64,000 nt of DNA from the NCBI GenBank assembly GCA_965655095.1, contig OZ296658.1:60574001-60638000 (forward strand), in the 5' to 3' direction. Below, in pieces: positions 241-56,156 of this stretch. The translations under genes and the position numbers were made by a program. Under the pieces are notes generated by a model that saw nothing but the letters and a program-made list of their open reading frames with translations, did not search any database and was not told the origin of the DNA. How positions within the stretch are numbered: position 1 is the first letter of the stretch; each line of letters begins with the position of its first letter. This stretch comes from Haplodiscus bocki (lineage: Eukaryota).

Positions 241-908
241 TGTTGCCAAGCTCAGCGTCAGCTCTGGGTCTCAGTTGTGAGGCAAAGTAAACTTCAAGTG
301 GCTTTTTATTGTGTCTGATTTCCAATTAGAATCCATTTGATAAATCGAGCGAGGAATTAATGGTCCGCTAGTTTCCAGTTGGTGAAGTTAACCTCGCAGT
401 TTTAAATTCAGCTTCCACACACGCCATATTGGTTGCTGTAACCCACTATAAAGCACACGGACTTTCTTTGAAATAGTTTATTCGCTTTGGTCTTGGTTGG
501 TCCTTCCAGTGGGCCAGGTGCTGTTTACAAAAAAAGATCTTCGCTTCAAGTTTTGCTGTAGTTCACCAGCGGAGGCAACTTTTCTTTCGAGCTGTTTTTA
601 GTTTTTCCCTTCCGTCCAAGGCCTAGTTTTTTGCCTGCATACTAAAGTTGCCTAGACTTTGCTCAAGCGTTCACGATGTTTTCCATGAAAAGATTACCGT
701 GACTTGTTCTCTAGCTTGCACGTTTGTTTTAGTTCAACATTAACAGAATTGACCGCTAAAGTTGGTTGCGCTACCTAATATTATATATACACACTTTGGT
801 TAAGTGAACTTTTGTTTGTTTGTGAAATCTGTAAGTTTGATAGTACATCTTTACCTCCTTTATCAGCAATACTTCTCGAGATTTGCGCTGGTGTTCCCTT
901 GGCGCAAA
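241..908. repeat. Monomer A of the trimeric HOR (first full example, 668 bp)
   Basis: Starts at anchor TGTTGCCAAGCTCAGCGTCAGCTCTGGGTCTCAGTTGTG and then carries GATTTCCAATTAGAATCCATTTGAT, CAGTTGGTGAAG and GCTTCCACACACGCCATATTGGTTGCTGTA. These blocks are collinear with B and C. The start phase is my arbitrary choice. Confidence 0.9.
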
Positions 909-1576
909 TGTTGCCATGCTCAGCTACGCCTCTGGGTCTTTGTTGTGGTTCAGTTGATTATGAGTCACATCGTTTGTTTGCATGAGTTCCATTTGGAGTC
1001 CATTTGATGTCTCGAGCGGGAATAATAATGCTTGGTTGTTATTAGTTGGTCAATGTTTACCTGCAAAACTGAGATTTGCTTCCAGATACGCTGTATTGAT
1101 TACTGCGATATGTTGCGATACAGAGGAGAGTTTCTTAACTTCATTTGAGCGCTGTCCTCTGGTTAATTGTTCAAGTTGGTAAGAGTACGCCCCAATAGGA
1201 CGCTTTGCTCTGAGACTCACACAATTACACCTGCTTGAGAAAAAAGTCCATCACAGTCGTTTTTGTTTTTTTCACTCGCTCCCAGCTCGCGTTTGTGCTC
1301 TCATGCTGAAGTTACTACCTAGGTTTTGTCCATGCATCTTTGATTTCTTGCAATAAAAATGTCAGGTGGCCTAAATGCTAGCTCTTTTGCTGGTTTCAGT
1401 TAAACAACAGTCGAAACTTCTCCAAAAGTTGTATATTTTTGCACCACACAATTATTAAACCTGAGACAACACAATTCGTCTCAAATTGATTCTTCAGTAG
1501 TTTTGGCAGCACCTCTTCGCCTTTCAAAGAAAGATATAGTTGCTCAATACGTTCACTGGTGTGTCGTTGGTGCAGA
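909..1576. repeat. Monomer B of the trimeric HOR (first example, 668 bp)
   Basis: Anchor TGTTGCCATGCTCAGCTACGCCTCTGGGTCTTTGTTGTG matches A at 32 of 39 positions. TGAGTTCCATTTGGAGTCCATTTGATGTCTCGAGCG matches A at 29 of 36. It also carries TAGTTGGTCAA and GCTTCCAGATACGCTGTATTGATTACTG. Confidence 0.9.
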
Positions 1577-2226
1577 TATTGCCAGTTTCAGCTTCGCTGG
1601 TCAGTCTAAATTTTGAGAAAAGGTATGTTGGATTACTGTGAGCCCAAGTTCCGATGAGAAACCGACTCTTTTCACAATCAAGAAAAAAGTGGTTGGTTCT
1701 TTTCTGTTGGTTAGCTTAGACAGGCAATTTATATTTTTGCCTCCCGGCACAAGTTTTGAGAACTGTACTCCACAAAGACGAACTGCTTCTTTTTCAAACA
1801 TTTTATGCGCCTTCTTGCTGTTTGATTACTTCTTTTGGCCAAGTTTTGCTCACAAAAAAGAGCTTCATTTTGATATTTGCTCAGAATATACCTTCTGTGG
1901 CAATTGTAAAGTTGTTGTTTTTTTCCCTCTTTCACGTTCATTTACAGTACACATTTGTGTCTACGTAAGAATTGTTCCTAGATTTTATTCGAACCCCATC
2001 AATTTGTTTGAAAAAGTTTATCAGGGAGCGTTTTTTTCGGTTTTCTTCAATTGATTGGCAACAAAATTAATTCCAAATTTTTTCTGCACCTCCCAATACA
2101 ATTGTTATAGTCCGAAAGAAAATTGAACTCTGTGTAAATGTTTACTTCGTTTTTTGGTAGAATCACTTTCCACATAATATTAGTGGAACTTGCTCGATAT
2201 AATCACAAGTAATCCACTGGAGCGAA
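1577..2226. repeat. Monomer C of the trimeric HOR (first example, 650 bp; ~660 bp in most units)
   Basis: Anchor TATTGCCAG(G/T)TTCAGCTTCGC, followed by AGTTCCGATGAGAAACC and CTGTTGGTTAGC at offsets matching the A and B blocks. It is the most diverged of the three. A typical unit has anchors at 30171, 30839, 31508 and 32170 (668, 669, 662 bp). Confidence 0.85.
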
Positions 2227-5200
2227 TGTTGCCAAGCTCAGCGTCAGCACTGGGACTCAGTTGTGAGGCAAAGTAAACTTCAAGTGGCTTTTTAGTGTGT
2301 CTGATTTCCAATTAGACTCCATTTGATTTCTCGAACGAGGAATTAATGGTCCGCTAATTTCCAGTTGGTGAAGTTAACCTTGCAGTTTCAAATTCAGCTT
2401 CCACACACGCCAGAGTTTTTGCTGTAACCCACTTTAAAGCGCACGGCTCTTCTCTGAAAAGGTTTATTCGCTTTGGTCTTGGTTGGTCCCCCAAGTGGGC
2501 CACGTTCTGTTTGCAAAAAAAGACCTTCGCTTCAAGTTTTGCTGCAGTTCACCAGCGCAGGCAAGTTTTCTTTCGAACTGTTTTTGGTTTTATCCTTCCG
2601 TACAATTCCTACTTTTGTGCCTGCATACTAAAGTTGCATAGACTTTGCTCAAGCGTTCACGATGTTTTCCATGGAAAGAATACTGTGGCTTGTTTTCCAG
2701 CTTGCACGTTTGTTTTAGTCCAACATTAACAGAATTGACCGCTAAAGTTCGTTGCGCTACTTAATATCAAATATATACACCTTAGTTGGGTAAACTTTTG
2801 TTTGTTTGTGAAATCTGTAAGTTTGATAGTACATCTTTACCTTCATTATCAGCAATACTTCTCGAGATTTGCGCTAGTGTTCCCTTGGCGCAACTGTTGC
2901 CATGCTCAGCTTTACCTCTGGGTCTTTGTTGTGGTTCAGTTGATTATGAGTCACATCGTTTCTTTGCAAGAGTTCCATTTGGAGTCCATTTGATGTCTCG
3001 AGCGGGAATATTGTTGCTTGGTTGTTATTAGTTGGTCAATGTTTACCTGCAAATCTGACATTTGCTTCCAGATACGCTGTATTGATTACTGCCATACGGT
3101 GAGATACAGAGGAGAGTTTTTTTAACTTCATTTGAGCGCTGTCTTTTGGTTAATTGTTCAAGTTGGTAAGAGTAGGCCCCTAAAGGACGCTTTGCTCCGA
3201 CTCTCGCACAATTACACCTGCTTGAGAAAAAAGTCCATCACAGTCGTTTTTGTTTTTTCCACTCGCTCCCAGCTCGCGTTTGTGCTCTCATGCTGAAGTT
3301 ACTACCTAAGTTTTGTCCATGCATCTTTGATTTCTTACAATAAAAATGTCAGGTGGCCTAGTTCCTAGCTCTTTTGCTGGTTTCAGTTAAACAACAGCCG
3401 AAACTTCTCCAAAAGTTGTATATTTTTGCACCACACAATTATTAAACCTGAGACAACAGAATTCGTGTCGAATTGATTCTTCAGTAGTTTTGGCAGCACC
3501 TCTTCTCCATTCAAAATAAGATATAGTTGCTCAATACGTCCACTGGTGTGTCGTTGGTGCAGATAATGCCAGGTTCAGCTTCGCTTGTCGGTCTAAATTT
3601 TGAGAAAAGTTTTGTTGGATTACTGTGTGCCCAATTTCCGATAAGAAACCGACTCATTTCACAATCAAGCAAAAATTGCTTGGTTCTTTTCTGTTGGTTA
3701 GCATAGACAGGCAAGTTTTAGTTTTGCATCCCGGCACAAGTTTTGAGAATTGTACTCCACAAAGACGAACTGCTTCTTTTTCAAACATTTTATGCGCCTT
3801 CTTGCTGTTTGATTACTTCTTTTGGCCAAGTTTTGCTCACAAAAAAAGAGCTTCATTTTGAGATTTGCTCAGAATATACCTTCTGTGGCATTTGTAAAGT
3901 CGTTGTTTTTTTCCCTTTTTCACGTTCATAAACAGTTCACATTTGTATCTACGTAAGAATTGTTCCTAGATTTTATTCGAACCCCATCAATTTGTTAGAA
4001 AAAATTTATCAGGGAGCGTTTTATTCGGCTTTCTTCAATTGATTGGCAACAAAATTAATTCCAAATTTTTTCTGCACCTCCCAATACAATTGTTATACTC
4101 CAAAAGAAAAATGAAATCTGTGTAAATGTTTACTTGGTTTTTTGGTAGAATCACTTTCCACATAAAATTAGTGGAACTTGCTCGATATAAACACAAGCAA
4201 TCCACTGGAGCGAATGTTGCCAAGCTCAGCGTCAGCACTGGGTCTCAGTTGTGAGGCAAAGTAAACTTCAAGTGGCTTTTTAATGTGTCTGATTTCCAAT
4301 TAGAATCCATTTGATATCTCGAACGAGGAATTAATGATCCGCTACTTTCCAGTTGGTGAAGTTAACCTTGCAGTTTTAAATTCAGCTTCCACACACGCCA
4401 GAGTTTTTGCTGTAATCAGCTTTAAAGCACACGGCTTTTCTTTGGAAAGGTTTATTCGCTTTGGTCTTGGTTGGTCCCCCAAGTGGGCCACGTTCTGTTT
4501 GCAAAAAAAGACCTTCGCTTCAAGTTTTGCTGTAGTTCACCAGCGGAGGCAACTTTTCTTTCGAGCTGTTTTTGGTTTTTCCCTTCCGTACAATTCCTAC
4601 TTTTGTGCCTGCATACTAAAGTTGCATAGACTTTGCTCAAGCGTTCACGCTGTTTTCCATGGAAAGAACACCGTGGCTTGTTTTCCAGCTTGCACGTTTG
4701 CTTTAGTTCAACATTAACAGTATTGACCGCTAAAGTTGGTTGCGCTACTTAATATCAAATATACACACCTTAATTGAGTAAACTTTTGTTTGTTTGTGAA
4801 ATCTGTAAAGTTGATAGTACATCTTTACCTTCATTGTCAGCAATTCTTCTCGAGATTTGCGCTAGTGTTCCCTTGGCGCAAATGTTGCCATGCTCAGCTA
4901 CACCTCTGGGTCTTTGTTGTGGTTCAGTTGATTATGAGTCACATCGTTTGTTTGCATGATTTCCATTTGGAGTCCATTTGATGTCTCGAGTGGGAATAAT
5001 AATGCTTGGTTGTTATTAGTTGGTCAATGTTTACCTGCAAAACTGAGATTTGCTTGCAGATACGCTGTATTGATTACTGCGATATGCTGCGATACAGAGG
5101 AGAGTTTTTTAACTTCATTTGAGTGCTGTCTTCTGGTTAATTGTTCAAGTTGGTAAGAGTACGCCCTAATAGGACGCTTTGCTCCGACACTCGCACAATT

Positions 5201-8200
5201 ACACCTGCTTGAGAAAAAAGTCCAACAGAGCCGTTTTTGATTTTTCCACTCGCGCCCAGCTCGCTTTTGTGCTCTCATGCTGAAGTTACTACCTAGGCTT
5301 TGTCCATGCATCATTGATTTCTTGCAATGAAAATGTCAGGTGGCCTAATTGCTAGCTCTTTTGCTGGTTTCAGTTAAACAACAGCCGAAACTTCTCCAAA
5401 AGTTGTATATTTTTGCACCACACACTTATTACACCTGAGACAACAGAATTCGTGTCAAATTGATTCTTTTGTAGTTTTGGCAGCACCTCTTCGCCATTTA
5501 AAATAAGATATAGTTGCTCAATATTTTCACTGGTGTGTCGTTGGTGCAGATATTGCCAAATTCAGCTTCGCTTGTCGGTCTAAGTTCTGAGAAAAGGTAT
5601 GTTTGATTTACTTTGTGCGCAAGTTCCGATGAGAAACCGACTCATTTCACAATCAAGCAGACTTTGGTTGCTTCTTTTCTGTTGGTTAGCTTAGACAGGC
5701 AAAATTTATTTTTGCATCCCGGCACAAGTTTTGATAACTGTACTCCACTAAGACGAATTGCTTCTTTTTCAAACAGTTGATGCGCCTTGATGCTGTTTGA
5801 TTACTTCTATTGGCCAAGTTTTGCTCACAAAAAAAGAGCTTCATTTTGATATTTGCTCAGTATATACCTTCTGTGGCAAATGTAAAGTCGTTGTTCTTTT
5901 CCTTCTTTCACGTTCACTTACAGTTCACAATCGTGTCTACGTAAAAATTGTTCCTAGATTTTAATCAAACCCCATCAATTTGTTGGAAAAAGTTAATCAC
6001 GGGGCGTTTTTTCAAACTTTTGTCTTTCTTCAATTGATTGTCGACAAAATTCATTCCAGATTTGTTCTGCACCTCCCAATACAATTGTTTTATTCCAAAA
6101 GTAAATTGAATTTTGTGTAATTGTTTACTTGGTTTTTTGGTAGAATCACTTTCCCCATAACATTAGTTGAACTTGCTCGATAAAATCACAAGTAATCCAC
6201 TGTCACGGATGTTGCCAAGCTCAGCGTCAGCTCTGGGTCTCAGTTGTGAGGCAAAGTAAACTTGAAATAGATTTTTGGCAGGTCTGATTTCCAATTAGAA
6301 TCCATTTGATATCTTGAGCGAGGAATTAATGGTCCGCTAGTTTCAAGTTGTTGAAGTTATCCTCGCAGTTTTAAATTCAGCTTCCACACACGTCATATTG
6401 GTTGCTGTAACCGACTATAAAGCACACGGAATTTCTTTGAAAAAGTTTCTTCGCTTTGGTCTTGGTTGGTCCGTCCAGTGGGTCAGGTTCTGTTTACAAA
6501 AAAACCTTCGCTCCAAGTTTTGCTGTAGTTCACCAGCGGATGCAAGTTTTCTTTCGAACTGTTTTTGGTTTCACCCTTCCGTACAATTCCTACTTTTGTG
6601 CCCGCATACTAAAGTTGCATAGACTTTGCCCAAGCGTTCACGATGTTTTCCATGGAAAGAAAACCGTGGCTTTTTTTCCAGCTTGCACGTTTGTTTTAGT
6701 TCAACATTAACAGAATTGACCGCTAAAGTTGGTTGCGCTTGTTAATATCAAATATATACACCTTAGTTGAGTAAACTTTTGTTTGTTTGTGAAATCTGTA
6801 AGTTTGATAGTTTATATTTACCTTCTTTATCAGCAATACTTCTCGAGATTTGCGCTGGTGTTCCCTTGGCGCAAATGTTGCCATGCTCAGCCACACATCT
6901 GGGTCTCTGTTGTGGTTCAGTTGATTATGAGTCACATCGCTTGTTTGCATGAGTTCCATTTGGAGTCCATTTAATGTCACGAGGAGGAATAATGTTGCTT
7001 GGTTGTTATTAGTTGGTCAATGTTTACCTGCAAAACTGAGATTTGCTTCCAGATACGCTGTATTGATTACTGCGATACGGTGCGATGCAGAGGAGAGTTT
7101 TTTCTAACTTCATTTGAGCGCTGTCTTTTGGTTAATTGTTCAAGTTGGTAAGAGTACGCCCCAATAGGACGCTTTGCTCCGACTCTCGCACAATTACACC
7201 TGCTTGAGAAAAAAGTCCATCACAGTCGTTTTTGTTTTTTCCACTCGCTCCCAGCTCGCGTTTGTGCTCTCATGCTGAAGTTACTACCTAAGTTTTGTCC
7301 ATGCATCTTTGATTTCTTACAATAAAAATGTCAGGTGGCCTAGTTCCTAGCTCTTTTGCTGGTTTCAGTTAAACAACAGCCAAAACTTCTCCAAAAGTTT
7401 TATATTTTTGCACCACACAATTATTAAACCTGAGACAACAGAATTCGTGTCAAACTGATTCTTGAGTAGTTTTGGCAGCACCTCTTCGGCATTTAAAATA
7501 AGATATAGTTGCTCAATATTTTCACTGGTGTGTCGTTGTTTGAGATATTGCCAGGTTCAGCTTCGCTGGTCGGTCTAAATTTTGAGAAAAGTTATGTTGG
7601 ATTACTGTGTGCCCAATTTCCGATGAGAAACCGACTCATTTCACAATCAAGCAAAAATTGCTTGGTTCTTTTCTGTTGGTTAGCTTTGACAGGCAAGTTT
7701 TAGTTTTGCATCCCGGCACAAGTTTTGAGAACTGTTCTCCACAAAGACGACCTGCTTCTTTTTCAAACAGTTGATGCGCCTTCATGCTGTTTGATTATTT
7801 CTATTGGCCAAGTTTTGCTCACAAAAAAAGAGCTTCATTTTGATATTTGCTCAGAATATACCTTCTGTGGCAAATGTAAAGTAGTTGTTCTTTTCCCTCT
7901 TTCACGTTCACTTACAGTTCACATTTGTGTCTACGTAAAAATTGTTCCTAGATTTTAATAGAACCCCATCTACTTGTTGGAAAAACTTAATCACGGGGCG
8001 TTTTTTCAAACTTTCGGCTTTCTTCAATTGATTGTCGACAAAATTCATTCCAGATTTGTTCTGCATCTCCCAATACACTTGTTTTAATCCAAAAGTAAAT
8101 TGAATTTTGTGTAATTGTTTACTTAGTTTTTTGGTAGAATCACTTTCCCCATAACATTAGTTGAACTTGCTCGATAAAATCACAAGTAATCCACTGTCAC

Positions 8201-11200
8201 GGATGTTGCCAAGCTCAGCTTCAGCTCTGGGTCTCAGTTGTGAGGCAAAGTAAACTTGAAATAGATTTTTAGTAGGTCTGATTTCCAATTAGAATCCATT
8301 TGATATCTTGAGCGAGGAATTAATGGTCCGCTAGTTTCAAGTTTTTGAAGTTAACCTCGCAGTTTTAAATTCAGCTTCCACGCACGCCATATTGGTTGCT
8401 GTAACCCAATATAAAGCACACGGATTTTCTTTGAAAGGGGTTATACGCTTTGCTCTAGGTTCGTCCTTCCAGTGGGTCAGGTTCTGTTTACAAAAAAACC
8501 TTCGCTCCAAGTTTTGCTGTAGTTCACCAGCGGAGGCACGTTTTCTTTCGAACTGTTTTTGGTTTTGCCCTTACATACAATTCCTACTTTTGTGCCTGCA
8601 TACTAAAGTTGCATAGACTTTGCTCAACCAATCACGATGTTTTCCATGGAAAGAATATCGTGGCTTGTTTTCCAGCTTGCACGTTTGTTTTGGTTCAACA
8701 TTAACATAATAGACCGCTAAAGTTGGTTGCGCTACTTAATATCAAATACATACACCTTAGTTGAGTAAACTTTTGTTTGTTTGTGAAATCTGTAAGTTTG
8801 ATAGTATATCTTTACCTTCGTTATCAGCAATACTTCTCGAGATTTGCGCCAGCGTTCCCTTGGCGCAAATGTTGCCATGCTCAGCTACACCTCTGGGTCT
8901 TTGTTGTGGTTCAGTTGATTATGAGTCACACCGTTTGTTTGCATGAGTTCCATTTGGAGTCCATTTGATGTCTCTAGCGGGAATAATAATGCTTGGTTGT
9001 TACTAGTTGGTCAATGTTTACCTGCAAAACTGAGATTTGCTTGCAGATACTTTGTATTGATTACTGCGATATGTTGCGATACAGAGGAGAGTTTCTTAAC
9101 TTCATTTGAGCGCTGTCTTCTGGTTAGTTGTTCAAGTTGGTAAGAGTACGCCCCAATAGGACGCTTTGCTCCGACAATCGCACAATTACACCTGCTTGAG
9201 AAAAAAGTCCATCACAGCAGTTTTTGTTTTTTCCACTCGCTCCCAGCTCGCGTTTGTGCTCTCATGCTGAAGTTACTACCTAAGTTTTGTCCATGCATCT
9301 TTGATTTCTTACAATAAAAATGTCAGGTGGCCTAGTTCCTAGCTATTTTGCTGGTTTGAGTTAAACAACAGCCAAAACTTCTCCAAAAGTTTTATATTTT
9401 TGCACCACACAATTATTAAACCTGAGACAACAGAATTCGTGTCAAATTGATTCTTGAGTAGTTTTGGCAGCACCTCTTCGGCATTTAAAATAAGATATAG
9501 TTGCTCAATATTTTCACTGGTGTGTCGTTGGTGCAGATATTGCCAGGTTCAGCTTCGCTGGTCGGTCTAAATTTTGAGAAAAGTTATGTTGGATTACTGT
9601 GTGCCCAATTTCCGATGAGAAACCGACTCATTTCACAATCAAGCAAAAATTGCTTGGTTCTTTTCTGTTGGTTAGCTTTGACAGGCAAGTTTTAGTTTTG
9701 CATCCCGGCACAAGTTTTGAGAACTGTTCTCCACAAAGACGAACTGCTTCTTTTTCAAACAGTTGATGCGCCTTCATGCTGTTTGATTATTTCTATTGGC
9801 CAAGTTTTGCTCACAAAAAAAGAGCTTCATTTTGATATTTGCTCAGAATATACCATCTGTGGCAAATGTAAAGTCGTTGTTCTTTTCCCTCTTTCACGTT
9901 CACTTACAGTTCACATTTGTGTCAACGTAAAACTTTTTCCTGAATTTTATTCGAACCCCATCAATTTGTTGGAAAAAGTTAATCATGGGGCGTTTTTTCA
10001 AACATTCGGCTTTCTTCAATTGATTGGCAGCAAAATTAATTCCAAATTTTTTCTGCACCTCCCAATACAAATGTTATACTCCAAAAGAAAATTGAAATCT
10101 GTGTAAATGTTTACTTGGTTTTTTGGTAGAATCACTTTCCCCATAACATTAGTTGAACTTGCTCGATAAAATCACAAGTAATCCACTGTCACGGATGTTG
10201 CCAAGCTCAGCGTCAGCTGTGGGTCTCAGTTGTGAGGCAAAGTAAACTTGAAATAGATTTTTGGTAGGTCTGATTTCCAATTAGAATCCATTTGATAAAT
10301 CGAGCGAGGAATTAGTGGTCCGCTAGTTTCGATTTGGTGAAGTTAACCTCGCAGTTTTAAATTCAGCTTACACACACGCCATATTGGTTGCTGTAACCCA
10401 CTATAAAGCACACGGACTTTCTTTGAAAAGGTTTATTCTCTTTGGTCTTGGTTGGTCCTACCAGTGGGCCAGGTTCTGTTTACACAAAAGACCTTCGCTT
10501 CAAGTTTTGCTGTAGTTCAACAGCGCAGGCAACTTTTCTTTCGAGCTGTTTTTAGTTTTTCCCTTCCGTTCAAGGCTTAGTTTTTTGCCTGCATACTAAG
10601 GTTGCCTAGACTTTGCTCAAGCGTTCACGATGTTTTCCATGCAAAGATTACCGTGGCTGGTTTTCCAGCTGGCACCTTTGTTTTAGTTGAACAACAACAG
10701 AAATGACCGCTAAATTTGGTTGCGCTACCTGATATTAAATATACACACCTTGGTTGAGTAAACTTTTGTTTGTTTGTGAAATCTGTAAGTTTGATAGTAT
10801 ATCTTTACCTTCTTTATCAGCAATACTTCTGGAGATTTGCGCTAGTATTCGCTTGGCGCAAATGTTGCCATGCTCAGCTACGCCTCTGGGTCTTTGTTGT
10901 GGTTCAGTTAACTATGAGTCACATCGTTTGTTTGCATGAGTTCCATTTGGAGTCCATTTGATGTCTCGAGCGGGAATAAAGTTGCATGGTTTTTATTAGT
11001 CGGTCAATTTTTACCTGCAAAACTGAGATTTGCTTCCAGATACGCTGTATTGATTACTGCGATATGGTGCGATACAAAGGAGAAATTTTTTACCTTCATT
11101 TGAGCGCTGTTTTTTGGTTAATTGTTCAAGTTGGTAAGAGTACTCCCCAAAAGGACGCTTTGCTCTGCGACTTGCACAATCACACCTGCTTGAGAAAAAG

Positions 11201-35843: not shown

Positions 35844-36181
35844 AGTTGTTCTTTTCCCTCTTTCACGTTCACTTACAGTTCACATTTGTGTCTACGTAAA
35901 AATTGTTCCTAGATTTTAATAGAACCCCATCTACTTGTTGGAAAAACTTAATCACGGGGCGTTTTTTCAAACTTTCGGCTTTCTTCAATTGATTGTCGAC
36001 AAAATTCATTCCAGATTTGTTCTGCATCTCCCAATACACTTGTTTTAATCCAAAAGTAAATTGAATTTTGTGTAATTGTTTACTTAGTTTTTTGGTAGAA
36101 TCACTTTCCCCATAACATTAGTTGAACTTGCTCGATAAAATCACAAGTAATCCACTGTCACGGATGTTGCCAAGCTCAGCT
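35844..36181. other. Patch identical to 7883-8220 (candidate long-range gene-conversion tract)
   Basis: Shares all distinctive variants of the unit near 8 kb (TTTTAATAGAACCCCATCTACTT, AAAACTTAATCACGGGG, GTCGACAAAATTCATTCC, CTGTCACGGATG, CTCAGCTTCAGC). The otherwise near-identical sister unit at 37.8-38.2 kb lacks them. Confidence 0.85.
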
Positions 36182-45100: not shown

Positions 45101-48100
45101 TCAATTTGGCATGAATACACTCCCATTAGGACTTTCTGCTCCGATACTCGCACAGTTTCACCTGCTTGAGAAAAAAGTCCATCACAGTCGTTTTTCTTTT
45201 TTTTTATCCAGTCGCTCGCAGCTCGCATTTGTGTTCTCATGCTGAAGTTACTACCTAAATTTTCTCCTTGCATCTTTGATTTCTTGCAATAAAACTGTCA
45301 AGTGGCCTAATTGCTAGCTTTTATGCTGGTTTCAGTTGAACAACAGTCGAAATTTTTCCAAAAGTTGTATTTTTTTGCACCACAAAATTATTAAACCTGA
45401 AACAACAGAATTCGTGTCAAATTGATTCTTTTGTAGATTTGGTAGCACCTCTTCGCCATTCAAAAAGAGATATAGTTGCTCAATATGTTCACTAGTGTGT
45501 CGTTGGTGCAGATATTGCCAGGTTCAGCTTCGCTCGTCGGCCTAAGTTGTGAGAAAAGCTATGTTTGACCTACTGTGTGCCCAAGTTCCGATGAGAAACC
45601 AACTCATTTCACAGTCAAGCAAAATTTGGTTGCTTCTTTTCTGTTGGTTAGCTTAGACAGGCAAGTTTTAATTTTGCATCCCGGCACAAGTTTTGATAAC
45701 TGTACTCCACAAAGACGAACTGTTTCTTTTTCAAACATTTTATGCGCCTTCTTGCTGTTTGATTACTTCTATTGGCCAAGTTTTGATCACAAAAAAAGAG
45801 CTTCTTTTTGATATTTGCTCAGAATATACCTTCTGTGGCAAATGTAAAGTCGTTGTTTTTTTCCCTCTTTCACGTTCATTAACAGTTCACATTTGTGTCT
45901 ACGTAAAAATTGTTCCTAGATTTTATTCGAACCCCATCAATTTGTTGGAAAAAGTTAATCAGGGAGCGTTTTTTTTAATTTTTCGGCTTTCTTCAATTGA
46001 TTGGCAACAAAATTATTTCCAGATTTTTTCTGCACCTCCCAATACAAATGTTATACTCCAAAAAAATTGAATTCTGGGTAAAGTTTTACTTGGTTTTTTG
46101 GTAGTATCACTTTCCACATAATATTAGTGGAACTTGCTCGATATAATCACAAGTAATCCACTGGAGCGATTGTTGCCAAAGTCAGGGTCAGCTCTGGGTC
46201 TCAGTTGTGGAGCAAAGTAAACATCAAGTGGCTTTTTAGTGTGTCTGATTTCCAATTAGAATCCATTTGATAAATCGAGCGAGGAATCAATGGTCCGCTA
46301 GTTTCGATTTGGTGAAGTTAACCTCGCAGTTTTAAATTCAGCTTCCACACACGCCATATTGGTTGCTGTAACCCACTAAAAAGCACACGGACTTTCTTTG
46401 AAAAAACTTCCTCGCTTTGGTCTTGGTTGGTCCTTCCAGTGGGCCAGGTTCTGTTTACAAAAAAAAGACCTTCGCTTCAAGTTTTGCTGTAGTTCACCAG
46501 CGCAGGCAACTTTTCTTTCGAGCCGTTTTTAGTTTTTTTCCTCCTTTCAAGGCCTAGTTTTTTGCCTGCATACTAAAGTTGCCTAGAATTTGCTCAAGTG
46601 TTCACATTGTTTTCCATGAAAAGATTACCGTGGCTGGTTTTCCAGCTTGCATTTTTGTTTTAGTTGAACAACAACAGAAATGACCGCTAAAGTTGGTTGC
46701 GCTACCTAATATTAAATATACACACCTTGGTTGAGTAAACTTTTGTTTGTTTGCGAACTCTGTGAGTTTGATAGTACATCTTTACCTTCTTTATCAGCAA
46801 TACTTCTCGAGATTTGCGCTGGTGTTCCCTTGGCGCAAATGTTGCCATGCTCAGCTACGCCTCTGGGTCTTTGTTGTGGTTCAGTTGATTATGAGTCACA
46901 TCGTTTGTTTGCATGAGTTCCATTTGGAGTCCATTTGATGTCTCGAGCGGGAAAATTGTTGCTTGGTTGTTTTTAGTTGGTCAAATTCTACCTGCGAAAC
47001 TGAGATTTTCTCCTGACACGCTGTATTGATTGCTGCGATACGTTGCGACGCAGAGAAGAGTTTTGTTTAACTTCATTTGAGCGCTGTTTTGTTGGTTAAC
47101 TGTTCAATTTGGCGTGAATACACTCCCATTAGGACTTTCTGCTCCGATACTCGCACAGTTTCACCTGCTTGAGAAAAAAGTCCATCACAGTCGTTTTTCT
47201 TTTTTTTTATCCAGTCGCTCGCAGCTCGCATTTGTGTTCTCATGCTGAAGTTACTACCTAAATTTTCTCCTTGCATCTTTGATTTCTTGCAATAAAACTG
47301 TCAAGTGGCCTAATTGCTAGCTGTTATGCTGGTTTCAGTTGAACAACAGTCGAAATTTTTCCAAAAGTTGTATTTTTTTGCACCACAAAATTATTAAACC
47401 TGAAACAACAGAATTCGTGTCAAATTGAGTCTGCAGTAGTTTTGGTAGCACCTCTTCGCCATTCAAAAAGAGATATAGTTGCTCAATATGTTCACTAGTG
47501 TGTCGTTGGTGCAGATATTGCCAGGTTCAGCTTCGCTCGTCGGTCTAAGTTGTGAGAAAAGCTATGTTTGAACTACTGTGTGCCCAAGTTCCGATGAGAA
47601 ACCAACTCATTTCACAGTCAAGCAAAATTTGGTTGCTTCTTTTCTGTTGGTTAGCTTAGACAGGCAAGTTTTAATTTTGCATCCCGGCACAAGTTTTGAT
47701 AACTGTACTCCACAAAGACGAACTGTTTCTTTTTCAAACATTTTATGCGCCTTCTTGCTGTTTGATTACTTCTATTGGCCAAGTTTTGATCACAAAAAAA
47801 AGAGCTTCTTTTTGATATTTGCTCAGAATATACCTTCTGTGGCAAATGTAAAGTCGTTGTTTTTTTCCCTCTTTCACGTTCATTAACAGTTCACATTTGT
47901 GTCTACGTAAAAATTGTTCCTAGATTTTATTCGAACCCCATCAATTTGTTGGAAAAAGTTAATCAGGGAGCGTTTTTTTAATTTTTCGGCTTTCTTCAAT
48001 TGATTGGCAACAAAATTATTTCCAGATTTTTTCTGCACCTCCCAATACAAATGTTATACTCCAAAAAAATTGAATTCTGGGTAAATTTTTACTTGGTTTT

Positions 48101-51100
48101 TTGGTAGTATCACTTTCCACATAATATTAGTGGAACTTGCTCGATATAATCACAAGTAATCCACTGGAGCGATTGTTGCCAAAGTCAGGGTCAGCTCTGG
48201 GTCTCAGTTGTGGAGCAAAGTAAACATCAAGTGGCTTTTTAGTGTGTCTGATTTCCAATTAGAATCCATATGATAAATCGAGCGAGGAATTAATGGTCCG
48301 CTAGTTTCGAGTTGGTGAAGTTAACCTCGCAGTTTTAAATTCAGCTTCCACACACGCCATATTGGTTGCTGTAACCCACTAAAAAGCACACGGACTTTCT
48401 TTGAAAAAACTTCCTCGCTTTGGTCTTGGTTGATCCTTCCAGTGGGCCAGGTTCTGTTTACAAAAAAAGACCTTCGCTTCAAGTTTTGCTGTAGTTCACC
48501 AGCGCAGGCAACTTTTCTTTCGAGCCGTTTTTAGTTTTTTTCCTCCTTTCAAGGCCTCGTTTTTTGCCTGGATACTAAAGTTGCCTAGACTTGGCTCAAG
48601 TGTTCACATTGTTTTCCATGAAAAGATTACCGTGGCTGGTTTTCCAGCTTGCATTTTTGTTTTAGTTGAACAACAACAGAAATGACCGCTAAAGTTGGTT
48701 GCGCTACCTAATATTAAATATACACACCTTGGTTGAGTAAACTTTTGTTTGTTTGCGAACTCTGTGAGTTTGATAGTACATCTTTACCTTCATTATCAGC
48801 AATAATTCTCGAGATTTGCGTTGGTGTTCCCTTGGCGCAAATGTTGCCATGCTCAGCTACGCCTCTGGGTCTTTGTTGTGGTTCAGTTGATTATGAGTCA
48901 CATCGCTTGTTTGCATGAGTTCCATTTGGAGTCCATTTGATGTCTCGAGCGGGAAAATTGTTGCTTGGTTGTTTTTAGTTGGTCAAATTCTACCTGCGAA
49001 ACTGAGATTTTCTCCTGACACGCTGTATTGATTGCTGCGATACGTTGCGACGCAGAGAAGAGTTTTGTTTAACTTCATTTGAGCGCTGTTTTGTTGGTTA
49101 ACTGTTCAATTTGGCATAAATACGCTCCCATTAGGACTTTCTGCTCCGATACACGCACAATTTCACCTGCTTGAGAAAAAAGTCCATCACAGTCGTTTCT
49201 TTTTTCCACTTGCTCCCAGCTCGCGTATGTGCTCTCATGCTGAATTTACTACCTAGGTTTTGTCCATGCATCTTTGATTTCTGGCAATAAAACTGTCACG
49301 TGGCCTAATTGCTAGCTCTTATGCTGGTTTCAGTTAAATAACAGCCGTAATTTTTCCAAAAGTTGTATATTTTTGCACCACACAATTATTAAACCTGAGA
49401 CAACAGAATTCGTGTCAAATTGGTTCTTCAGTAGTTTTGGCAGCACCTCTTCGCCATTTAAAATAAGATATAGTTGCTCAATATTTTCACTGGTGTGTCG
49501 TTGGTGCAGATATTGCCAGGTTCAGCTTCGCTTGTCGGTCTAAGCTGTGAGAAAAGGTATGTTTGACTTACTGTGTGCCCAAGTTCCGATGAGAAACCGA
49601 CTCATTTCACAATCAACCAAAATTTGGTTGGTTCTTTTCTGTTGGTTAGCTTAGACAGGCAATTTATATTTTTGCATCCCGGCACAAGTTTTGATAACTG
49701 TACTCCACAAAGACGAACTGTTTCTTTTTCAAACTTTCTATGCGCCTTCTTGCTGTTTGATTACTTCTATTGGCCAAGTTTTGCTCACAAAAAAAGAGCT
49801 TCATTTTGATATTTGCTGAGAATATACCTTCTGTGGCAAATGTAAAGTCGTTGTTTTTTTCCCTCTTTCACGTTCATTTACAGTTCACATTTGTGTCTAC
49901 GTAAAAACTGTTCCTAGATTTTATTCGAACCCCATCAATTTGTTGGAAAAAGTTAACAGGGAGCGTTTTTTTACTTCTTCGGCTTTCTTCAATTGATTGG
50001 CAACAAAATTGATTCCAATTTTTTTCTGCACCTCCCAATACAATTGTTATACTCCGAAAGAAAATTGAAATCTGTGTAAATGTTTACTTGATTTTTTGGT
50101 AGAATCACTTTCCACATAATATTAGTGGAACTTGCTCGTCATAATCACAAGTATTCCACTTGAACGAATGTTGCCAAGCTCAGCGTCAGCTCTGGGTCTC
50201 AGTTGTGAGGCAAAGTAAACTTCAAGTGGCTTTTTAGTGTGTCTGATTTCCAATTAGAATTCATTTGATAAATCGAGCGAGGAATTAATGGTCCGCTAGT
50301 TTCCAGTTGGTGAAGTTAATCTCGCAGTTTTGAATTCAGCTTCCACACACGCCATATTGGTTGCTGTAACCCACTATAAAGCACACGGGCTTTCTCTGAA
50401 AAAGTTTTTTCGCTTTGGTCTTGGTTGGTCCTTACAGTGGGCCAGGTTCTGTTTACAAAAAAGACCTTCGCTTCAAGTTTTGCTGTAGTTCACCAGCGCA
50501 TGCAATTTTTCTTTCGAGCTGTTTTTAGTTTTTCCTTTCCGTTCAAGGCCTCGTTTTTTGCCTGCATACTAAAGTTGCCTAGACTTTGCTCAAGCGGTCA
50601 CGATGTTTTCCATGAGAAGATTACCGTGGCTGGTTTTCCAGCTTGCACTTTTGTTTTAGTTGAACAACAACAGAAACGACCCGCTAAAAATGGTTGCGCT
50701 ACCTCATATTAAATATATACACCTTAGTTGAGTAAAGTTTTGTGTACTTGTGAATTCAGTAAATTTGATAGTACATCTTTACCTTCATTATCAGCAATAA
50801 TTCTCGAGATTTGCGTTGGTGTTCCCTTGGCGCAAATGTTGCCATGCTCAGCTACGCCTCTGGGTCTTTGTTGTGGTTCAGTTGATTATGAGTCACATCG
50901 TTTGTTTGCATGAGTTCCATTTGGAGTCCATTTGATGTCTCGAGCGGGAAAATTGTTGCTTGGTTGTTTTTAGTTGGTCAAATTCTACCTGCGAAACTGA
51001 GATTTTCTCCTGACACGCTGTATTGATTGCTGCGATACGTTGCGACGCAGAGAAGAGTTTTGTTTAACTTCATTTGAGCGCTGTTTTGTTGGTTAACTGT

Positions 51101-53199
51101 TCAATTTGGCATAAATACGCTCCCATTAGGACTTTCTGCTCCGATACACGCACAATTTCACCTGCTTGAGAAAAAAGTCCATCACAGTCGTTTCTTTTTT
51201 CCACTCGCTCCCAGCTCGCGTATGTGCTCTCATGCTGAATTTACTACCTATGTTTTGTCCATGCATCTTTGATTTCTGGCAATAAAACTGTCACGTGGCC
51301 TAATTGCTAGCTCTTATGCTGGTTTCAGTTAAATAACAGCCGTAATTTTTCCAAAAGTTGTATATTTTTGCACCACACAATTATTAAACCTGAGACAACA
51401 GAATTCGTGTCAAATTGGTTCTTCAGTAGTTTTGGCAGCACCTCTTCGCCATTTAAAATAAGATATAGTTGCTCAATATTTTCACTGGTGTGTCGTTGGT
51501 GCAGATATTGCCAGGTTCAGCTTCGCTTGTCGGTCTAAGCTGTGAGAAAAGGTATGTTTGACTTACTGTGTGCCCAAGTTCCGATGAGAAACCGACTCAT
51601 TTCACAATCAACCAAAATTTGGTTGGTTCTTTTCTGTTGGTTAGCTTAGACAGGCAATTTATATTTTTGCATCCCGGCACAAGTTTTGATAACTGTACTC
51701 CACAAAGACGAACTGTTTCTTTTTCAAACTTTCTATGCGCCTTCTTGCTGTTTGATTACTTCTATTGGCCAAGTTTTGCTCACAAAAAAGAGCTTCATTT
51801 TGATATTTGCTGAGAATATACCTTCTGTGGCAAATGTAAAGTCGTTGTTTTTTTCCCTCTTTCACGTTCATTTACAGTTCACATTTGTGTCTACGTAAAA
51901 ACTGTTCCTAGATTTTATTCGAACCCCATCAATTTGTTGGAAAAAGTTAACAGGGAGCGTTTTTTTTTTACTTTTTCGGCTTTCTTCAATTGATTGGCAA
52001 CAAAATTGATTCCAAATTTTTTCTGCACCTCCCAATACAATTGTTATACTCCGAAAGAAAATTGAAATCTGTGTAAATGTTTACTTGATTTTTTGGTAGA
52101 ATCACTTTCCACATAATATTAGTGGAACTTGCTCGTCATAATCACAAGTATTCCACTTGAACGAATGTTGCCAAGCTCAGCGTCAGCTCTGGGTCTCAGT
52201 TGTGAGGCAAAGTAAACTTCAAGTGGCTTTTTAGTGTGTCTGATTTCCAATTAGAATTCATTTGATAAATCGAGCGAGGAATTAATGGTCCGCTAGTTTC
52301 CAGTTGGTGAAGTTAATCTCGCAGTTTTGAATTCAGCTTCCACACACGCCATATTGGTTGCTGTAACCCACTATAAAGCGCACGGACTTTCTCTGAAAAA
52401 GTTTTTTCGCTTTGGTCTTGGTTGGTCCTTACAGTGGGCCAGGTTCTGTTTACAAAAAAGACCTTCGCTTCAAGTTTTGCTGTAGTTCACCAGCGCATGC
52501 AATTTTTCTTTCGAGCTGTTTTTAGTTTTTCCTTTCCGTTCAAGGCCTCGTTTTTTGCCTGCATACTAAAGTTGCCTAGACTTTGCTCAACCGGTCACGA
52601 TGTTTTCCATGAGAAGATTACCGTGGCTGGTTTTCCAGCTTGCACTTTTGTTTTAGTTGAACAACAACAGAAACGACCCGCTAAAAATGGTTGCGCTACC
52701 TCATATTAAATATATACACCTTAGTTGAGTAAACTTTTCTGTACTTGTGAAATCAGTAAGTTTGATAGTACATCTTTACCTTCATTATCAGCAATACTTC
52801 TCGAGATTTGCGCTAGTGTTCCCTTAGCGCATATGTTGCCATGCTCAGCTACGACTCTGAGTCTTTGTTGTGGTTCAATTGAATATGATTCACATCGTTT
52901 GTTTCGATGAGTTCCATTTGGAGTCCATTTGATGTCTCAAGCGCGAAAAGCGTTGCTTGGTTGTTATTAGTTGGTCAAATTCTACCTGCGAAACTGAGAT
53001 TTTCTTCCTGACACGGTGTATTGATTGCTGCGATACGTTGCGACGCAGAGAAGAGTTTTGTATAACTTCATTTGAGCGCTGTTTTGTTGGTTAATTGTTC
53101 AATTTGGCATGAATACACTCCCATTAGGACTTTCTGCTCCGATACTCGCACAATTTCACCTGCTTGAGAAAAAAGGCAATCACAGTCGTTTTTTTTCCA

Positions 53200-56156
53200 T
53201 TAATTCCCAGCTGGCATTTCTGCTATCATACTGAAATCACTTCCTAGATTTTCTTGATGCATTTTTGATTTTCTACAATAAAACCAGCACGTTGCCTTTT
53301 TGCTTGCTCTTATGCTGGTTATAGTTAAATAACAGCCGAAATTTTTCAAAAAGTTGTATATTTTTGCACCAGATAATTATTAAACCTGAGAAAACAGAAT
53401 TCGTGTGAAATTGATTCTTCAGTAGTTTTGGTAGCACCTCTTCCCCATTCAAATAAAGATATAGTTGCTCAACCTGTTCACTGATGTGTCGTTGGTGCAG
53501 ATATTGCCAGGTTCAGCTTCGCTTTTCTGACTTAGTTGAGAAAAAATAGCTTTGACCTCCTATGTGCATGAGTTCCGATTAGAGTCCGTCTGATTTCACG
53601 ATCAAGCAAATTTTTTGTTGCCTGTTTCCAGTTTGTTAACTTAGACAGGCAAGTTTTATTTTTGCTTCACGGCGCAAGTTTCGATAACCGTACTCCACAA
53701 TGAGACGAACTGATTTCTTATCAAACAGTTTATGAGCTTTCATGCTGTTCGATTAATTCAGTTGGCCATGTTTTGCTGGCAACAAGAGCTTCATTCAGAG
53801 ATCTGCTATGATGATACTTACGATGGCAAAAGTCACTTCATTGTAATTTTCCGTGTATCTGTTCATTTTCAGAAGGCATCTGTCTCTCCGTTACAAACGT
53901 GCCTATGTTTTGTTCAAGCTTCCTCAAATTGTTGCTGAAAAATGATCAAGGAGCATATTATCTGAACTTTTGCTTGCTTTAATTATCTGACAGTAGGAGT
54001 CACTCCTGTAACTTTTTGCGCCTCTTTTTATATTTATTTTAAACCGGAAAACAGTTTTAAGATCTGAGTAATTGTTTAGTGGGTTGTTGTGGTAGAATCG
54101 TTTTCCCTTCAATATCATTGGAACTTGCTCGAAATGTTCACAAGAAAACCACTGGTGGAAATTTTGCCGAACTCAGCTTCAACTCTGCCTCCCAGCTGTG
54201 AACAAAAAAACTTGAAAGAGCTTTTCAGTGAGTGTGATTTCCATTTAGAATCCATTTGATATCTCGAGCAGGAAATCAATGGTCTGCTAGTTTGCAGTTG
54301 GTGAAGTTATAATCCCAGTATTGAATTTGGTTCCGACACACGCCACATTGTTTGCTGTTTCCCACTTTTAGTCACGCTGACTTTCATTGAAATGGTGTAT
54401 AGGCTTTGGTCTTGGTTGATCTTTCAGTGGGCCAGGTCACGCTCACAAGAAAAGCATCGCTTCGAGACTTGCTGTAGTTAACTTGCAGAGGCAAGTTTTG
54501 TATCGAACTCTTTGTTTTTTTTTCCATCCGTTCACAGCTGGCGATTGTGCTTCGTTACTAAAGTTGCCTAGATTTTCTTTATGCGTTCTCAATGTCTTAC
54601 CAAAAAACAATACCGTGGTCTCATTTTCAGCTTGCACGTTGATCTTAGAGATAAAACAACAGAATTGACCGCTATAGGTAATTGCGCAAATTAACAATAC
54701 AAATCAACACTTCAGTTAAGTGAACTTCTTCGTATTTTTTCAATCAGTGATTTTGGTGGTACAGTTTCACCTTCATTATCAGCAATACTCCACGAGATGT
54801 TCCCTATTGTTCCCGTGGCGCAAGTGATGCCAAGCTCGGCTTCGCTTCTGTGTCCTCGTTCTTGGTGAAGGTGAATTCGAGCTACATCTTTTGTTTGTCT
54901 GAGTTTCAGTTGGAGTCCATCCGATTTCTCCAGCGAGAAAACGTAGGTTGGTTGTTTTGAGTTAATTAAAATTTCTTTGCAAAACATTGTTCCGCTTCCT
55001 GACACGCTGCATTGATTGCTGCGAAGCGTTGCGATACAGAGAAGAGTTTTGTTTTATTTCTTCTGAGCGCTCTTGTGTTGCTTGCATGTTCATAATTGGT
55101 AAAAGTACGCCCCGAGATTTGCGCAATTACACCTGCTTGAGGGTAATCCATCACAGTCCTTTTGTATTTTTCCATTCGTTGACAGCTCGTCTTTGTGCTG
55201 TGATACTGAAGTTACTACCGAGTTCTTAGTTACTACCGAGTTCTTCCTCAAGCATTTTTTATCTCTTGCAATAAAATTCTCTTTTGGGCTAGTTGCAAGC
55301 TCTTATGCTAGTTTTTGTTAAATAACAGCCGAAATATTTCCAATACTTGTTATATTTTGCTGTAGATAGTTATTAAACCTGAACCAACAGAATTCGTGTC
55401 TGATTGATTCTTCAGTAGTTTTGGTAGTACTTCTTCGCACTTCAAAATAGGATATAGTTGAATATGTCCCTTGGTCTGTCGGTGGCGCAAGTAATGCCAA
55501 GCTCAGTTTCGCTTTTCTGTCTATGATGTGAGAAAAACATCGTTTGACCTACTGTGTGCAAAAGTTTCCATGAGAGTCCGTCTGATTTCTTGATTTGGCA
55601 AACTTAGGTCGTTCTTTTTCGGTTGGTTAGCCTATACAGGCAAATTTTACTTTTGCTTTCCGTTACAGTTTCGATAACTGTAATCCATTACAAGACAAAC
55701 TGATTTCTTTTAAAACAGGTTATACGACTTCATGCTGGTTGGTTGTTTCAGTTGGCAATATTTTTCTCACAAAAAGAGCTTCATTTGGAGATCCGCCAAG
55801 ATTACACTTACGGTGGCAATTGTCACGTCGTTTCATTTTTGCTTCTTGTTGTTTTTTCACAGTCCGCATTTCTTTCTACTTAAGAAACGTGCCTTGCCTT
55901 GATTCTAATCAAATCCCATCAACTTGTTGCATAAAATTAATCAAGGGGCGTTTTTTTCGAACATCCGGTTTTTTTCAATTGGTTGACGACAAAATTCGCT
56001 CCAGTAGTTTTCTTCACCTCTCAATATAATTGTTATCCACCGGAAAAATCTTTTAAGATCTGTGTAATTTTTTAGTAGTTGTTGTGGAAGAATCGTTTTC
56101 CCTTCAACATCATTGGGACTTGCTCAATATGTTCACCAGAAAACCACTGGTGCAAG
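53200..56156. repeat. Diverged layer of the array that still follows trimer order (end of B, then C, A, B, C)
   Basis: Anchors at 53502 (C), 54162 (A), 54825 (B) and 55492 (C). Collinear with the 2-kb unit but with far more substitutions and indels than any upstream copy. Confidence 0.9.
55210..55245. repeat. Perfect 18-bp tandem duplication (AGTTACTACCGAGTTCTT x2) inside a diverged B monomer
   Basis: Read directly from the sequence. The homologous site is single-copy in all upstream units. Confidence 0.92.

What the first reader, a model, noticed from the sequence alone, without database searches (positions are those of the whole stretch)
241..53200. The 2-kb unit is a higher-order repeat of three very long (~665-bp) diverged monomers
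Seen: three homologous anchors per unit, spaced about 668, 669 and 662 bp. Short blocks are about 80% identical between A and B and are separated by poorly alignable segments, while whole 2-kb units are far more similar to each other than A, B and C are. Established: this is the defining HOR architecture of primate alpha satellite, whose monomer is 171 bp, so these monomers are about four times longer. Inference: a centromeric or pericentromeric HOR satellite built from unusually long monomers. This is my best candidate for an undescribed system in the window.
Basis: partly seen in the sequence, partly recalled or inferred. Interest (0 to 1): 0.72.

Follow-up and report, generated by a model that had tools for sequence, protein, structure and literature searches.

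The report
Three-monomer satellite seeded by a transposon
The 2-kb tandem repeat really is built from three old, diverged ~667-bp copies, but each copy is an older ~290-bp satellite piece joined to a common ~0.4-kb jumping-gene copy, and it sits at essentially one ~106-kb locus, so it is an ordinary transposon-seeded satellite with no sign yet of being a centromere.

Summary
Observation confirmed. The window holds 26 full ~1,997-bp units (mean pairwise identity 92%). Each unit has three homologous monomers, A, B and C (668, 669 and 660 bp). They are about 55-66% alike and score z = 32-50 against shuffles. Monomers group into clean A, B and C clades.

The "unusually long monomer" is composite. 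About 375 bp of it is a near full-length copy of a dispersed ~425-bp non-autonomous element with at least 4,431 candidate copies genome-wide. The other ~290 bp is one monomer of an older satellite. That older satellite survives, without the element, as a 35-kb array of 1.69-kb units directly to the left. It reads straight across the insertion site, so it serves as an empty site.

The array has 159 monomers over ~106 kb on a 92-Mb chromosome, with a young core and older layers at both edges. The only other copy is a 5-kb piece on another chromosome, next to an assembly gap.

There is no coding potential, RNA family match or unusual DNA structure. The centromere reading is untested and unsupported.

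This is a known kind of repeat: a transposon-seeded composite satellite with a higher-order repeat. Earlier notes of this scan report similar single-locus layered macrosatellites elsewhere in this genome, and one follow-up covers this array's right edge.

The parts
1..53501 (+). Homogenised core of the 2-kb A-B-C higher-order repeat. This is the part inside the window; the core starts about 29.5 kb upstream of the window.
   Evidence: Units are 92-97% identical to the window consensus. Strict ABC order.
24167..26165 (+). Representative unit: monomer A 24167-24834, B 24835-25499, C 25508-26165
   Evidence: nhmmer decomposition with the three-monomer profile
24490..24860 (+). Transposon-derived part of monomer A, a near full-length copy of the dispersed ~425-bp element
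   Evidence: Profile of 5 dispersed copies, positions 10-402 of 403, E=1.4e-47
25150..25527 (+). Transposon-derived part of monomer B
   Evidence: Profile positions 5-397 of 403, E=9.8e-27
25833..26193 (+). Transposon-derived part of monomer C. Its 3' end is the anchor at the start of the next unit.
   Evidence: Profile positions 21-402 of 403, E=4.6e-16
24861..25149 (+). Locus-specific ~290-bp 'spacer' of monomer B, which is one monomer of the older satellite
   Evidence: Genome search found 48 first-look candidates; the 40 that were scored all lie in this array or the C5 copy. It is homologous to sub-repeats of the neighbouring 1.69-kb array.
241..280 (+). It consists of the last ~28 nt of the element (3' hairpin region) plus the first ~12 nt of the spacer.
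   Evidence: Alignment of 12 dispersed 3' ends with the three monomer junctions. The dispersed copies diverge from each other right after the ...CTCTG(TG) end.
52166..56154 (+). Two progressively older A-B-C units at the right edge. Identity to the consensus is 85% then 75%, and it falls from 95% to 76% within the first of these units.
56157..60764 (+). Oldest layer: seven monomers in the order A-A-B-C-A-C-B, 66-77% to the best type. The outermost monomers are equally far from A, B and C.
60765..64000 (.). Non-repeat right flank
   Evidence: No monomer or element profile hit. The one long ORF tested here (61,480-62,016, minus strand) had no Pfam domain.

Best explanation
This is a non-coding, essentially single-locus macrosatellite with a true higher-order repeat, and its history can be read from the sequence.

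(1) An older satellite of ~290-bp monomers occupied this site. It survives as 22 units of a 1.69-kb repeat directly to the left.

(2) One copy of an abundant ~425-bp non-autonomous interspersed element inserted between two of those monomers.

(3) The insertion was flanked by homologous satellite monomers. Unequal exchange between them duplicated 'element + one monomer' and created a new ~667-bp composite repeat. This step is inferred.

(4) The composite copies diverged to about 55-66% identity, giving types A, B and C.

(5) The A-B-C trimer (2.0 kb) was then amplified and kept homogenised by unequal crossing-over and gene conversion, mostly in the middle of the array. This left older, more diverged trimers and then ambiguous monomers at both edges.

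The most likely present state is inert repeat DNA or heterochromatin. No function is shown.
For: - Tandem structure and monomer homology.
- A, B and C clades that include the old layers.
- The dispersed element has sharp ends (query 314-317 to 738), copies 76-83% alike and at least 4,431 first-look candidates on many chromosomes.
- Its profile matches consensus positions 316-695 (E=7.5e-50), 984-1359 (4.5e-39) and 1663-2023 (1.4e-21), covering profile positions 5/10-402 of 403.
- All 159 monomers carry the element part on the + strand, and none is found in 15 kb of left flank or 13 kb of right flank.
- The spacer is confined to this array and the C5 copy.
- The left 1.69-kb array lies at C11:60,493,262-60,528,652. 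It has no element part but contains 5-6 spacer-like pieces per unit.
- A spacer-dimer profile with the element removed aligns as one hit across the insertion site, E=6e-21, with only 12 extra bases at the site.
- The spacer and element parts are about equally diverged among A, B and C (54-62% against 53-58%), as expected if they were duplicated together.
- There is no ORF longer than 138 aa in the array, no tRNA and no Rfam hit, and the DNA fold z-score is 0.3.
- Contigs from two samples cover the edge with 0-5 differences.
Against: - The step from insertion to the first duplication is inferred. A rolling-circle concatemer origin is not excluded.
- The profile of the dispersed element rests on only 5 copies, because no more loci could be fetched.
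- Only 2 of 151 columns that are invariant in the dispersed copies show a change shared by A, B and C. Direct support for a single captured copy is therefore thin and rests mainly on position and on equal divergence.
- The left array beyond C11:60,514,001 was seen only as search coordinates.
- Function was not tested in any way.
Confidence: 0.8

Rival explanations
1. The array is the functional centromere or pericentromere of chromosome C11. On this reading it is one of a set of chromosome-specific satellites.
For: It has a layered structure with a young core and old edges. It lies at an interstitial position, 60.5 of 91.8 Mb. Chromosome-specific long-monomer centromeric satellites exist in Vicia faba, where four repeats of 1.7-2.0 kb were confirmed by CenH3 ChIP (PMC5895790). 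Earlier unchecked notes of this scan list other single-locus layered macrosatellites in this genome.
Against: The array is only ~106 kb, plus 35 kb of the older array. No chromatin data exist. Layering arises in any array that is homogenised from its centre. There is no unusual dyad symmetry. The same genome has ~175-bp higher-order-repeat satellites that are at least as good candidates (unchecked).
Confidence: 0.1
2. The first tandem copies arose as a rolling-circle concatemer. On this reading a Helitron/Helentron-type element read through its 3' terminator into ~290 bp of flanking satellite, and the circular intermediate was copied several times before integration.
For: The element has a 3' terminal hairpin 5-7 nt from its end. 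In the copies read by eye, T lies on both flanks and 3 of 4 copies have no target duplication. Earlier notes report Helentron-type elements with internal repeats in this genome (unchecked). All element parts point the same way.
Against: The element's class is not established. The 9/10-bp terminal inverted repeat is matched by 128 of 1,000 shuffles, and one copy has an 8-bp direct duplication. The composite period equals one old monomer plus the element, which simple unequal exchange within the old array explains without extra assumptions.
Confidence: 0.12
3. Three independent, site-specific insertions of the element went into three neighbouring old monomers, and the 2-kb block was then amplified.
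For: The element parts of A, B and C are each closer to the dispersed consensus (58-67%) than to each other (53-58%), and only 2 derived changes are shared.
Against: The insertion point is the same in all three monomers. The spacers are as diverged as the element parts, whereas independent later insertions should leave the element parts more alike than the spacers. No element is present in any of the left-array units examined, about nine in 15 kb. All three share the GCG-to-GCC change in the hairpin arm.
Confidence: 0.03
4. Assembly artefact, or the internal repeat block of one giant transposon copy.
For: The C5 copy abuts a 200-N scaffold gap. Earlier notes describe arrays inside overgrown transposon copies elsewhere in this genome (unchecked).
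Against: The 134 kb examined on C11 has no N. The units differ by 1-12% in an ordered, layered way that collapse or duplication errors would not produce. Contigs from two samples match the edge. No transposon protein domain or element end was found in the flanks examined.
Confidence: 0.04

Closest known systems
Primate alpha-satellite higher-order repeats
   Same: The array is tandem, and its repeat unit is a fixed series of diverged homologous monomers. Unit-to-unit identity (92%) is far above monomer-to-monomer identity (55-66%). Monomers cluster by their position in the unit. A young homogeneous core is flanked by older, more diverged layers.
   Different: The monomer is 667 bp and composite, not ~171 bp. 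The array lies at a single ~106-kb locus instead of being megabase arrays on every chromosome. No centromere protein binding is known. The units are less homogeneous (88-99%) than active human arrays. The comparison with alpha satellite rests on my general knowledge.
Transposon-derived and composite satellite DNAs (review PMC12628747; TE tandems as satellite seeds, PMC5932611; tandem-repeat-containing MITEs in a clam, PMC3879986)
   Same: Part of the monomer is a recognisable copy of a dispersed mobile element, and the array grew by tandem amplification of that copy together with other DNA.
   Different: Here a whole element plus exactly one monomer of a pre-existing satellite forms the new monomer, and the empty-site version of the old satellite survives next door. 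The published cases mostly involve internal repeats of the element, element dimers, or shuffled remnants of several elements.
Long-monomer, mostly single-locus satellites of Vicia faba (687-2,033 bp) and Solanum (up to 5.4 kb) (PMC5895790)
   Same: The units are of kilobase scale, usually one locus per family, and some derive from transposons (in Solanum).
   Different: Those are plant satellites, and the V. faba repeats mostly lack internal subrepeats and any detectable similarity to other genomic sequences. Four of them are shown to bind CenH3, which is untested here.
Helentron-associated non-autonomous elements (HINE / DINE-1 type), as a possible class for the dispersed element only
   Same: Both are short, very abundant and non-coding, with a hairpin a few bases from the 3' end. 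One copy (L036) is interrupted by a tandem array. The flanks are mostly T with no target duplication.
   Different: Subterminal inverted repeats are not significant. No autonomous partner was examined. One copy shows an 8-bp direct duplication, which would fit a retroposon better. The class therefore stays open.

Membership tests
Higher-order-repeat satellite (architecture, not the alpha-satellite sequence family) | Head-to-tail tandem array of a multimeric unit | tested here: met
   There are 53 units (159 monomers), all on the + strand, with a period of 1,986-2,006 bp.
Higher-order-repeat satellite (architecture, not the alpha-satellite sequence family) | The unit consists of n homologous but diverged monomers | tested here: met
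   A, B and C are 65-67% identical pairwise, z = 32-50 against dinucleotide shuffles. 263 of 676 columns are identical in all three.
Higher-order-repeat satellite (architecture, not the alpha-satellite sequence family) | Units are much more alike than the monomers within a unit, and monomers form clades by position | tested here: met
   92% against 55-66%. The A, B and C clades have support 90, 100 and 94.
Alpha satellite (sequence family) | ~171-bp monomer related to the primate alpha consensus, with a CENP-B box in some monomers | tested here: not met
   The monomer is 660-669 bp and composite. Only a weak ~113-bp periodicity was found, and none at 171 bp (z=1.3 at 169 bp). No sequence comparison with alpha satellite was made.
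Centromeric satellite | Occupied by CENP-A/CenH3 nucleosomes at the primary constriction | not testable with these tools
   No chromatin or cytological data are available. No RNA or ChIP runs were listed.
Centromeric satellite | Either shared by the centromeres of many chromosomes, or the dominant array of its chromosome | tested here: inconclusive
   The satellite was found only on C11 (~106 kb) and as a 5-kb gap-adjacent piece on C5. The rest of C11 was not surveyed for larger arrays.
Transposon-derived composite satellite | Part of the monomer is homologous to a dispersed mobile element over that element's full length, with its own ends | tested here: met
   Profile positions 5/10-402 of 403, E down to 7.5e-50. 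The element has sharp ends and at least 4,431 candidate copies. The dispersed copies diverge from each other exactly after the end that lies inside the anchor.
Transposon-derived composite satellite | A related sequence without the element (empty site) | tested here: met
   The element-free spacer-dimer profile aligns in one piece across the site in the neighbouring 1.69-kb array, E=6e-21. That array has no element hit.
Helentron-type non-autonomous element (class of the dispersed element) | 3' terminal hairpin, subterminal inverted repeats, insertion between T and T without target duplication, and an autonomous partner with the same ends | tested here: inconclusive
   The hairpin is present. 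The 9/10-bp inverted repeat is not significant, being matched by 128 of 1,000 shuffles. The flanks were judged by eye on 4-12 copies.

The most novel reading that the evidence does not exclude
This array may be one of a set of chromosome-specific, transposon-seeded, layered macrosatellites that serve as the centromeres of this invertebrate's chromosomes. That would give a non-model animal lineage a centromere type like that of Vicia faba or potato, and a dated record of how a transposon insertion remodelled a centromeric satellite.
Probability: 0.08. Interest if true: 0.7.

Novelty: new member of a known kind. Interest (0 to 1): 0.33.

Why it matters
The locus is a clean worked example of how a satellite changes its period. 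The old 290-bp satellite, the inserted element, the composite 667-bp monomer, the trimeric higher-order repeat and the layered edges can all still be read in about 140 kb of contiguous sequence. That makes it useful for teaching or for modelling satellite turnover, and it is a candidate region for chromatin profiling in this species. It does not reveal a new kind of system. It also removes the main reason the finding looked exceptional, because the "four-times-longer monomer" is explained by the insertion.

Tried and rejected
- **TRF on the window.** It found nothing because its longest period is 500 bp. K-mer offsets and BLAST were used instead.
- **Coding repeat.** No ORF in the array exceeds 138 aa.
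- **RNA gene array.** There was no Rfam gathering hit and no tRNA in the window. The dispersed element gave no credible Rfam hit at E<=10, so no tRNA, 5S or 7SL head was found.
- **Structured or dyad-rich DNA.** The monomer fold z-score is 0.30, and only short chance-level inverted repeats were found.
- **Spacer as part of a dispersed element.** The two spacers searched (A and B) gave 57 and 48 candidates; the 40 scored in each search all lie in the array or the C5 copy.
- **Link to the ~116-122-bp tandem repeat near some dispersed copies.** nhmmer found no hit at E<=10.
- **Search with the whole 1.69-kb unit.** A 261-bp piece worked.
- **Organism identity.** It was not established. A V-ATPase subunit d exon near one dispersed copy gave only the family, with no useful taxa. 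Earlier notes disagree between coral and acoel worm.
- **Copy number from reads.** The runs are held as contigs only. The tool warns that summed word depth (core ~300-2,000, unique edge ~35) is not a copy number, so I use it only as being consistent with tens of copies.
- **Big protein searches and structure tools.** They were not used because nothing here is coding.
Full report
**What is in the window.** The window is 39% G+C and T-rich on the + strand along almost its whole length. TRF reports nothing because its longest period is 500 bp. The k-mer offset histogram is dominated by offsets of 1,986-2,007 bp and their multiples. BLAST of the first unit finds 26 full head-to-tail units from 241 to 52,165 at 90-93% identity. 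Beyond that there is one copy at 84%, one at 73%, and fragments out to about 60.3 kb. In a MAFFT alignment of the 26 units, pairwise identity is 88-99% (mean 92%). Neighbours average 95%, and there are visible blocks of local homogenisation.

**The three-monomer claim.** K-mer offsets within 2.2 kb show clear secondary peaks at 664-671 and 1,326-1,335 bp for k = 6, 8 and 10.
- The 1,997-bp consensus splits into A (668), B (669) and C (660).
- Pairwise global alignments give 65-67% identity over 620-641 columns. Scores are 200-247 against about 10 +/- 5 for dinucleotide shuffles, so z = 32-50.
- The three align almost without gaps along their whole length.
- A profile of the three monomers cuts the full array into 159 monomers, all on the + strand. 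Their order is strictly A-B-C except at the extreme edges.
- In a FastTree tree of 165 monomers the A, B and C types each form one clade (support 90, 100, 94). These clades include the old edge layers and the C5 copies; only three outermost monomers fall outside.

**Extent and layering.** The window is G000:C11:60,574,001-60,638,000 on a 91.8-Mb contig. With 60 kb fetched upstream and 10 kb downstream, the array runs from C11:60,528,861 to 60,634,764 (window 60,764). That is about 106 kb without any N.
- A core of about 42 units is 90-97% identical to the window consensus.
- On the left there are about six units at 76-81%, then older monomers.
- On the right there is one unit at 85%. Within it, identity falls from 95% in A to 76% in C.
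- Next comes one unit at 75%, then seven monomers (A-A-B-C-A-C-B) that become equally distant from all three types.

This agrees with earlier notes on the same window.

**Genomic distribution.** Genome searches with a whole unit and with two 290-bp sub-segments (the A and B spacers) find only this array and one other place, C5:7,091,614-7,096,695. The C5 piece is 5.08 kb (2.55 units). It is 96.7% identical to the C11 units around the window start and ends at a 200-N scaffold gap. The satellite is thus essentially single-locus, with about 53 units. Contigs from two samples of one study hold the edge region with 0-5 differences. The tool warns that depth from contigs is not a copy number. The roughly 10-60-fold higher summed word depth over the core is merely compatible with tens of copies.

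**What the monomer is made of.** The whole-unit search also gave short hits on many chromosomes, all to the end of one monomer and the start of the next.
- I fetched ten such loci. They share a discrete element whose copies all end at the same base and then diverge into unrelated flanks.
- A genome search with one copy returned at least 4,431 first-look candidates. The 40 scored copies are 76-83% identical and share sharp limits about 425 bp apart.
- A profile of five copies matches the consensus unit at 316-695 (E=7.5e-50), 984-1359 (4.5e-39) and 1663-2023 (1.4e-21). These matches cover profile positions 5/10-402 of 403, so each monomer holds a nearly complete element.
- All 159 monomers carry the element in the same orientation, and there is none in the flanks.
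- The anchor is the element's 3' terminal hairpin region plus about 12 nt beyond it.

**The other ~290 bp.** This spacer has no dispersed relatives. The monomer profile does, however, pick up its positions 32-323 repeatedly in the 15 kb to the left of the array.
- That region is a second tandem array with a 1.69-kb unit. It has 22 units at C11:60,493,262-60,528,652, again at a single locus.
- It has no element hit but contains five or six diverged spacer-like pieces per unit.
- I built a profile from spacer dimers with the element cut out. It aligns as one hit (positions 12-484, E=6e-21) across the point where the element sits in the 2-kb array, with only 12 extra bases there.

I read this as an empty site. 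The old satellite predates the element, and the element inserted between two of its monomers.

**History and mechanism.**
- Shown: the order of the layers, the composite nature of the monomer, the empty site, and the A/B/C clades.
- Inferred: once the element sat between two homologous satellite monomers, unequal exchange between those monomers duplicated "element + one monomer". This set the new 667-bp period.
- In one multiple alignment the spacers (54-62%) and the element parts (53-58%) are about equally diverged among A, B and C. This fits co-duplication better than three later insertions. All three also share a change in one hairpin arm.
- The element parts are each closer to the dispersed consensus (58-67%) than to each other, and only 2 of 151 invariant columns carry a change shared by A, B and C. 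The first duplications therefore probably followed the insertion quickly.
- After long divergence, the trimer became the unit of amplification and homogenisation, with the youngest copies in the middle.

**Class of the dispersed element.** It has a hairpin at each end. The 3' hairpin lies 5-7 nt from the end, and the end varies by a GT. By eye, T lies on both flanks and three of four copies have no target duplication, but one copy has an 8-bp direct duplication. One copy is interrupted by a ~122-bp tandem array. The 9/10-bp inverted repeat between the 5' end and the 3' subterminal region is not significant. No RNA-gene head was found. Earlier notes report Helentron-type elements in this genome (unchecked). 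I leave the class open between Helentron-type and SINE-like.

**Function.** The array has no ORF longer than 138 aa, no RNA family or tRNA, and no unusual single-strand DNA structure. No RNA run holds it. Nothing speaks for or against a centromere beyond the layered architecture and an interstitial position. The size (106 + 35 kb) and the single-locus distribution fit the many locus-specific macrosatellites noted elsewhere in this genome (unchecked) at least as well.

**Comparison with the literature.**
- Satellites with 0.7-2.0-kb monomers, mostly at single loci, are described in Vicia faba, where four of them were confirmed by CenH3 ChIP. The same paper cites units of up to 5.4 kb, often transposon-related, in Solanum (PMC5895790).
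- Origins of satellites from transposons, including composite monomers, are reviewed in PMC12628747.
- Transposon tandems as seeds for satellites are shown in PMC5932611.

The present case is a new member of that known kind. Its distinguishing point is that every intermediate stage is preserved in one contiguous locus.

**Limits.** The organism was not identified; earlier notes disagree between coral and acoel worm. No more genome loci could be fetched. The left end of the 1.69-kb array is known only from search coordinates.

Noticed in passing
L011-L012 (G000:C11:60,493,262-60,528,652, left of the window): A second single-locus tandem array of 22 units of 1.69 kb lies directly beside the 2-kb array in the same orientation. 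Some units are 98-99% identical. Each unit holds 5-6 diverged copies of the ~290-bp spacer and no transposon part.
   Followed up: partly
L012-L013 (window -38,778 to -31,350): In the old left layer, pairs of 2-kb units recur as a ~3.76-kb second-order repeat. One unit of each pair lacks ~220 bp across the C/A junction (consensus 1906 joined to 131). Identical BLAST scores show that the pair was copied as a block.
   Followed up: no
L018 5414-5613 and 5614-10695 (G000:C5:7,091,414-7,096,695): The only copy on another chromosome (2.55 units, minus strand) starts at a 200-N scaffold gap and ends in unique DNA inside monomer B. Its true size is unknown. It is closest (96.7%) to the C11 units at window -4,497 to +580.
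   Followed up: partly
window 1-53,000 (monomer alignment): There is a weak ~113-bp periodicity inside the 667-bp monomer (one sixth of its length). It gives z=4.6, with 0 of 2,000 column permutations as high, and a k-mer offset bump at 115-117 bp. The best internal match is offset ~132 within the spacer. It remains unexplained.
   Followed up: partly
L034:3771-5169, L036:1322-1679, L033:4-412: A ~116-122-bp tandem repeat lies near, or in L036 inside, three of the ten dispersed-element loci fetched. It has no detectable similarity to the 2-kb satellite or to the 1.69-kb unit.
   Followed up: partly
L032:1879-2481(-), L033:1328-2425(-), L034:180-1070(-): Copies of the dispersed element lie beside ordinary genes: a V-ATPase subunit d exon, a cation-ATPase C-terminal domain and a WD40 protein. 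The element is therefore not confined to repeat-rich regions.
   Followed up: no
L016 (window -13,546 to -13,068): One core unit carries a 152-bp deletion (consensus 479 joined to 632) inside the transposon-derived part of monomer A.
   Followed up: no
L010:1205-1645: One dispersed-element copy is flanked by an 8-bp direct duplication (AAGTAAAT) and lacks the last G(TG) of the usual 3' end, unlike three other copies that have no duplication.
   Followed up: no
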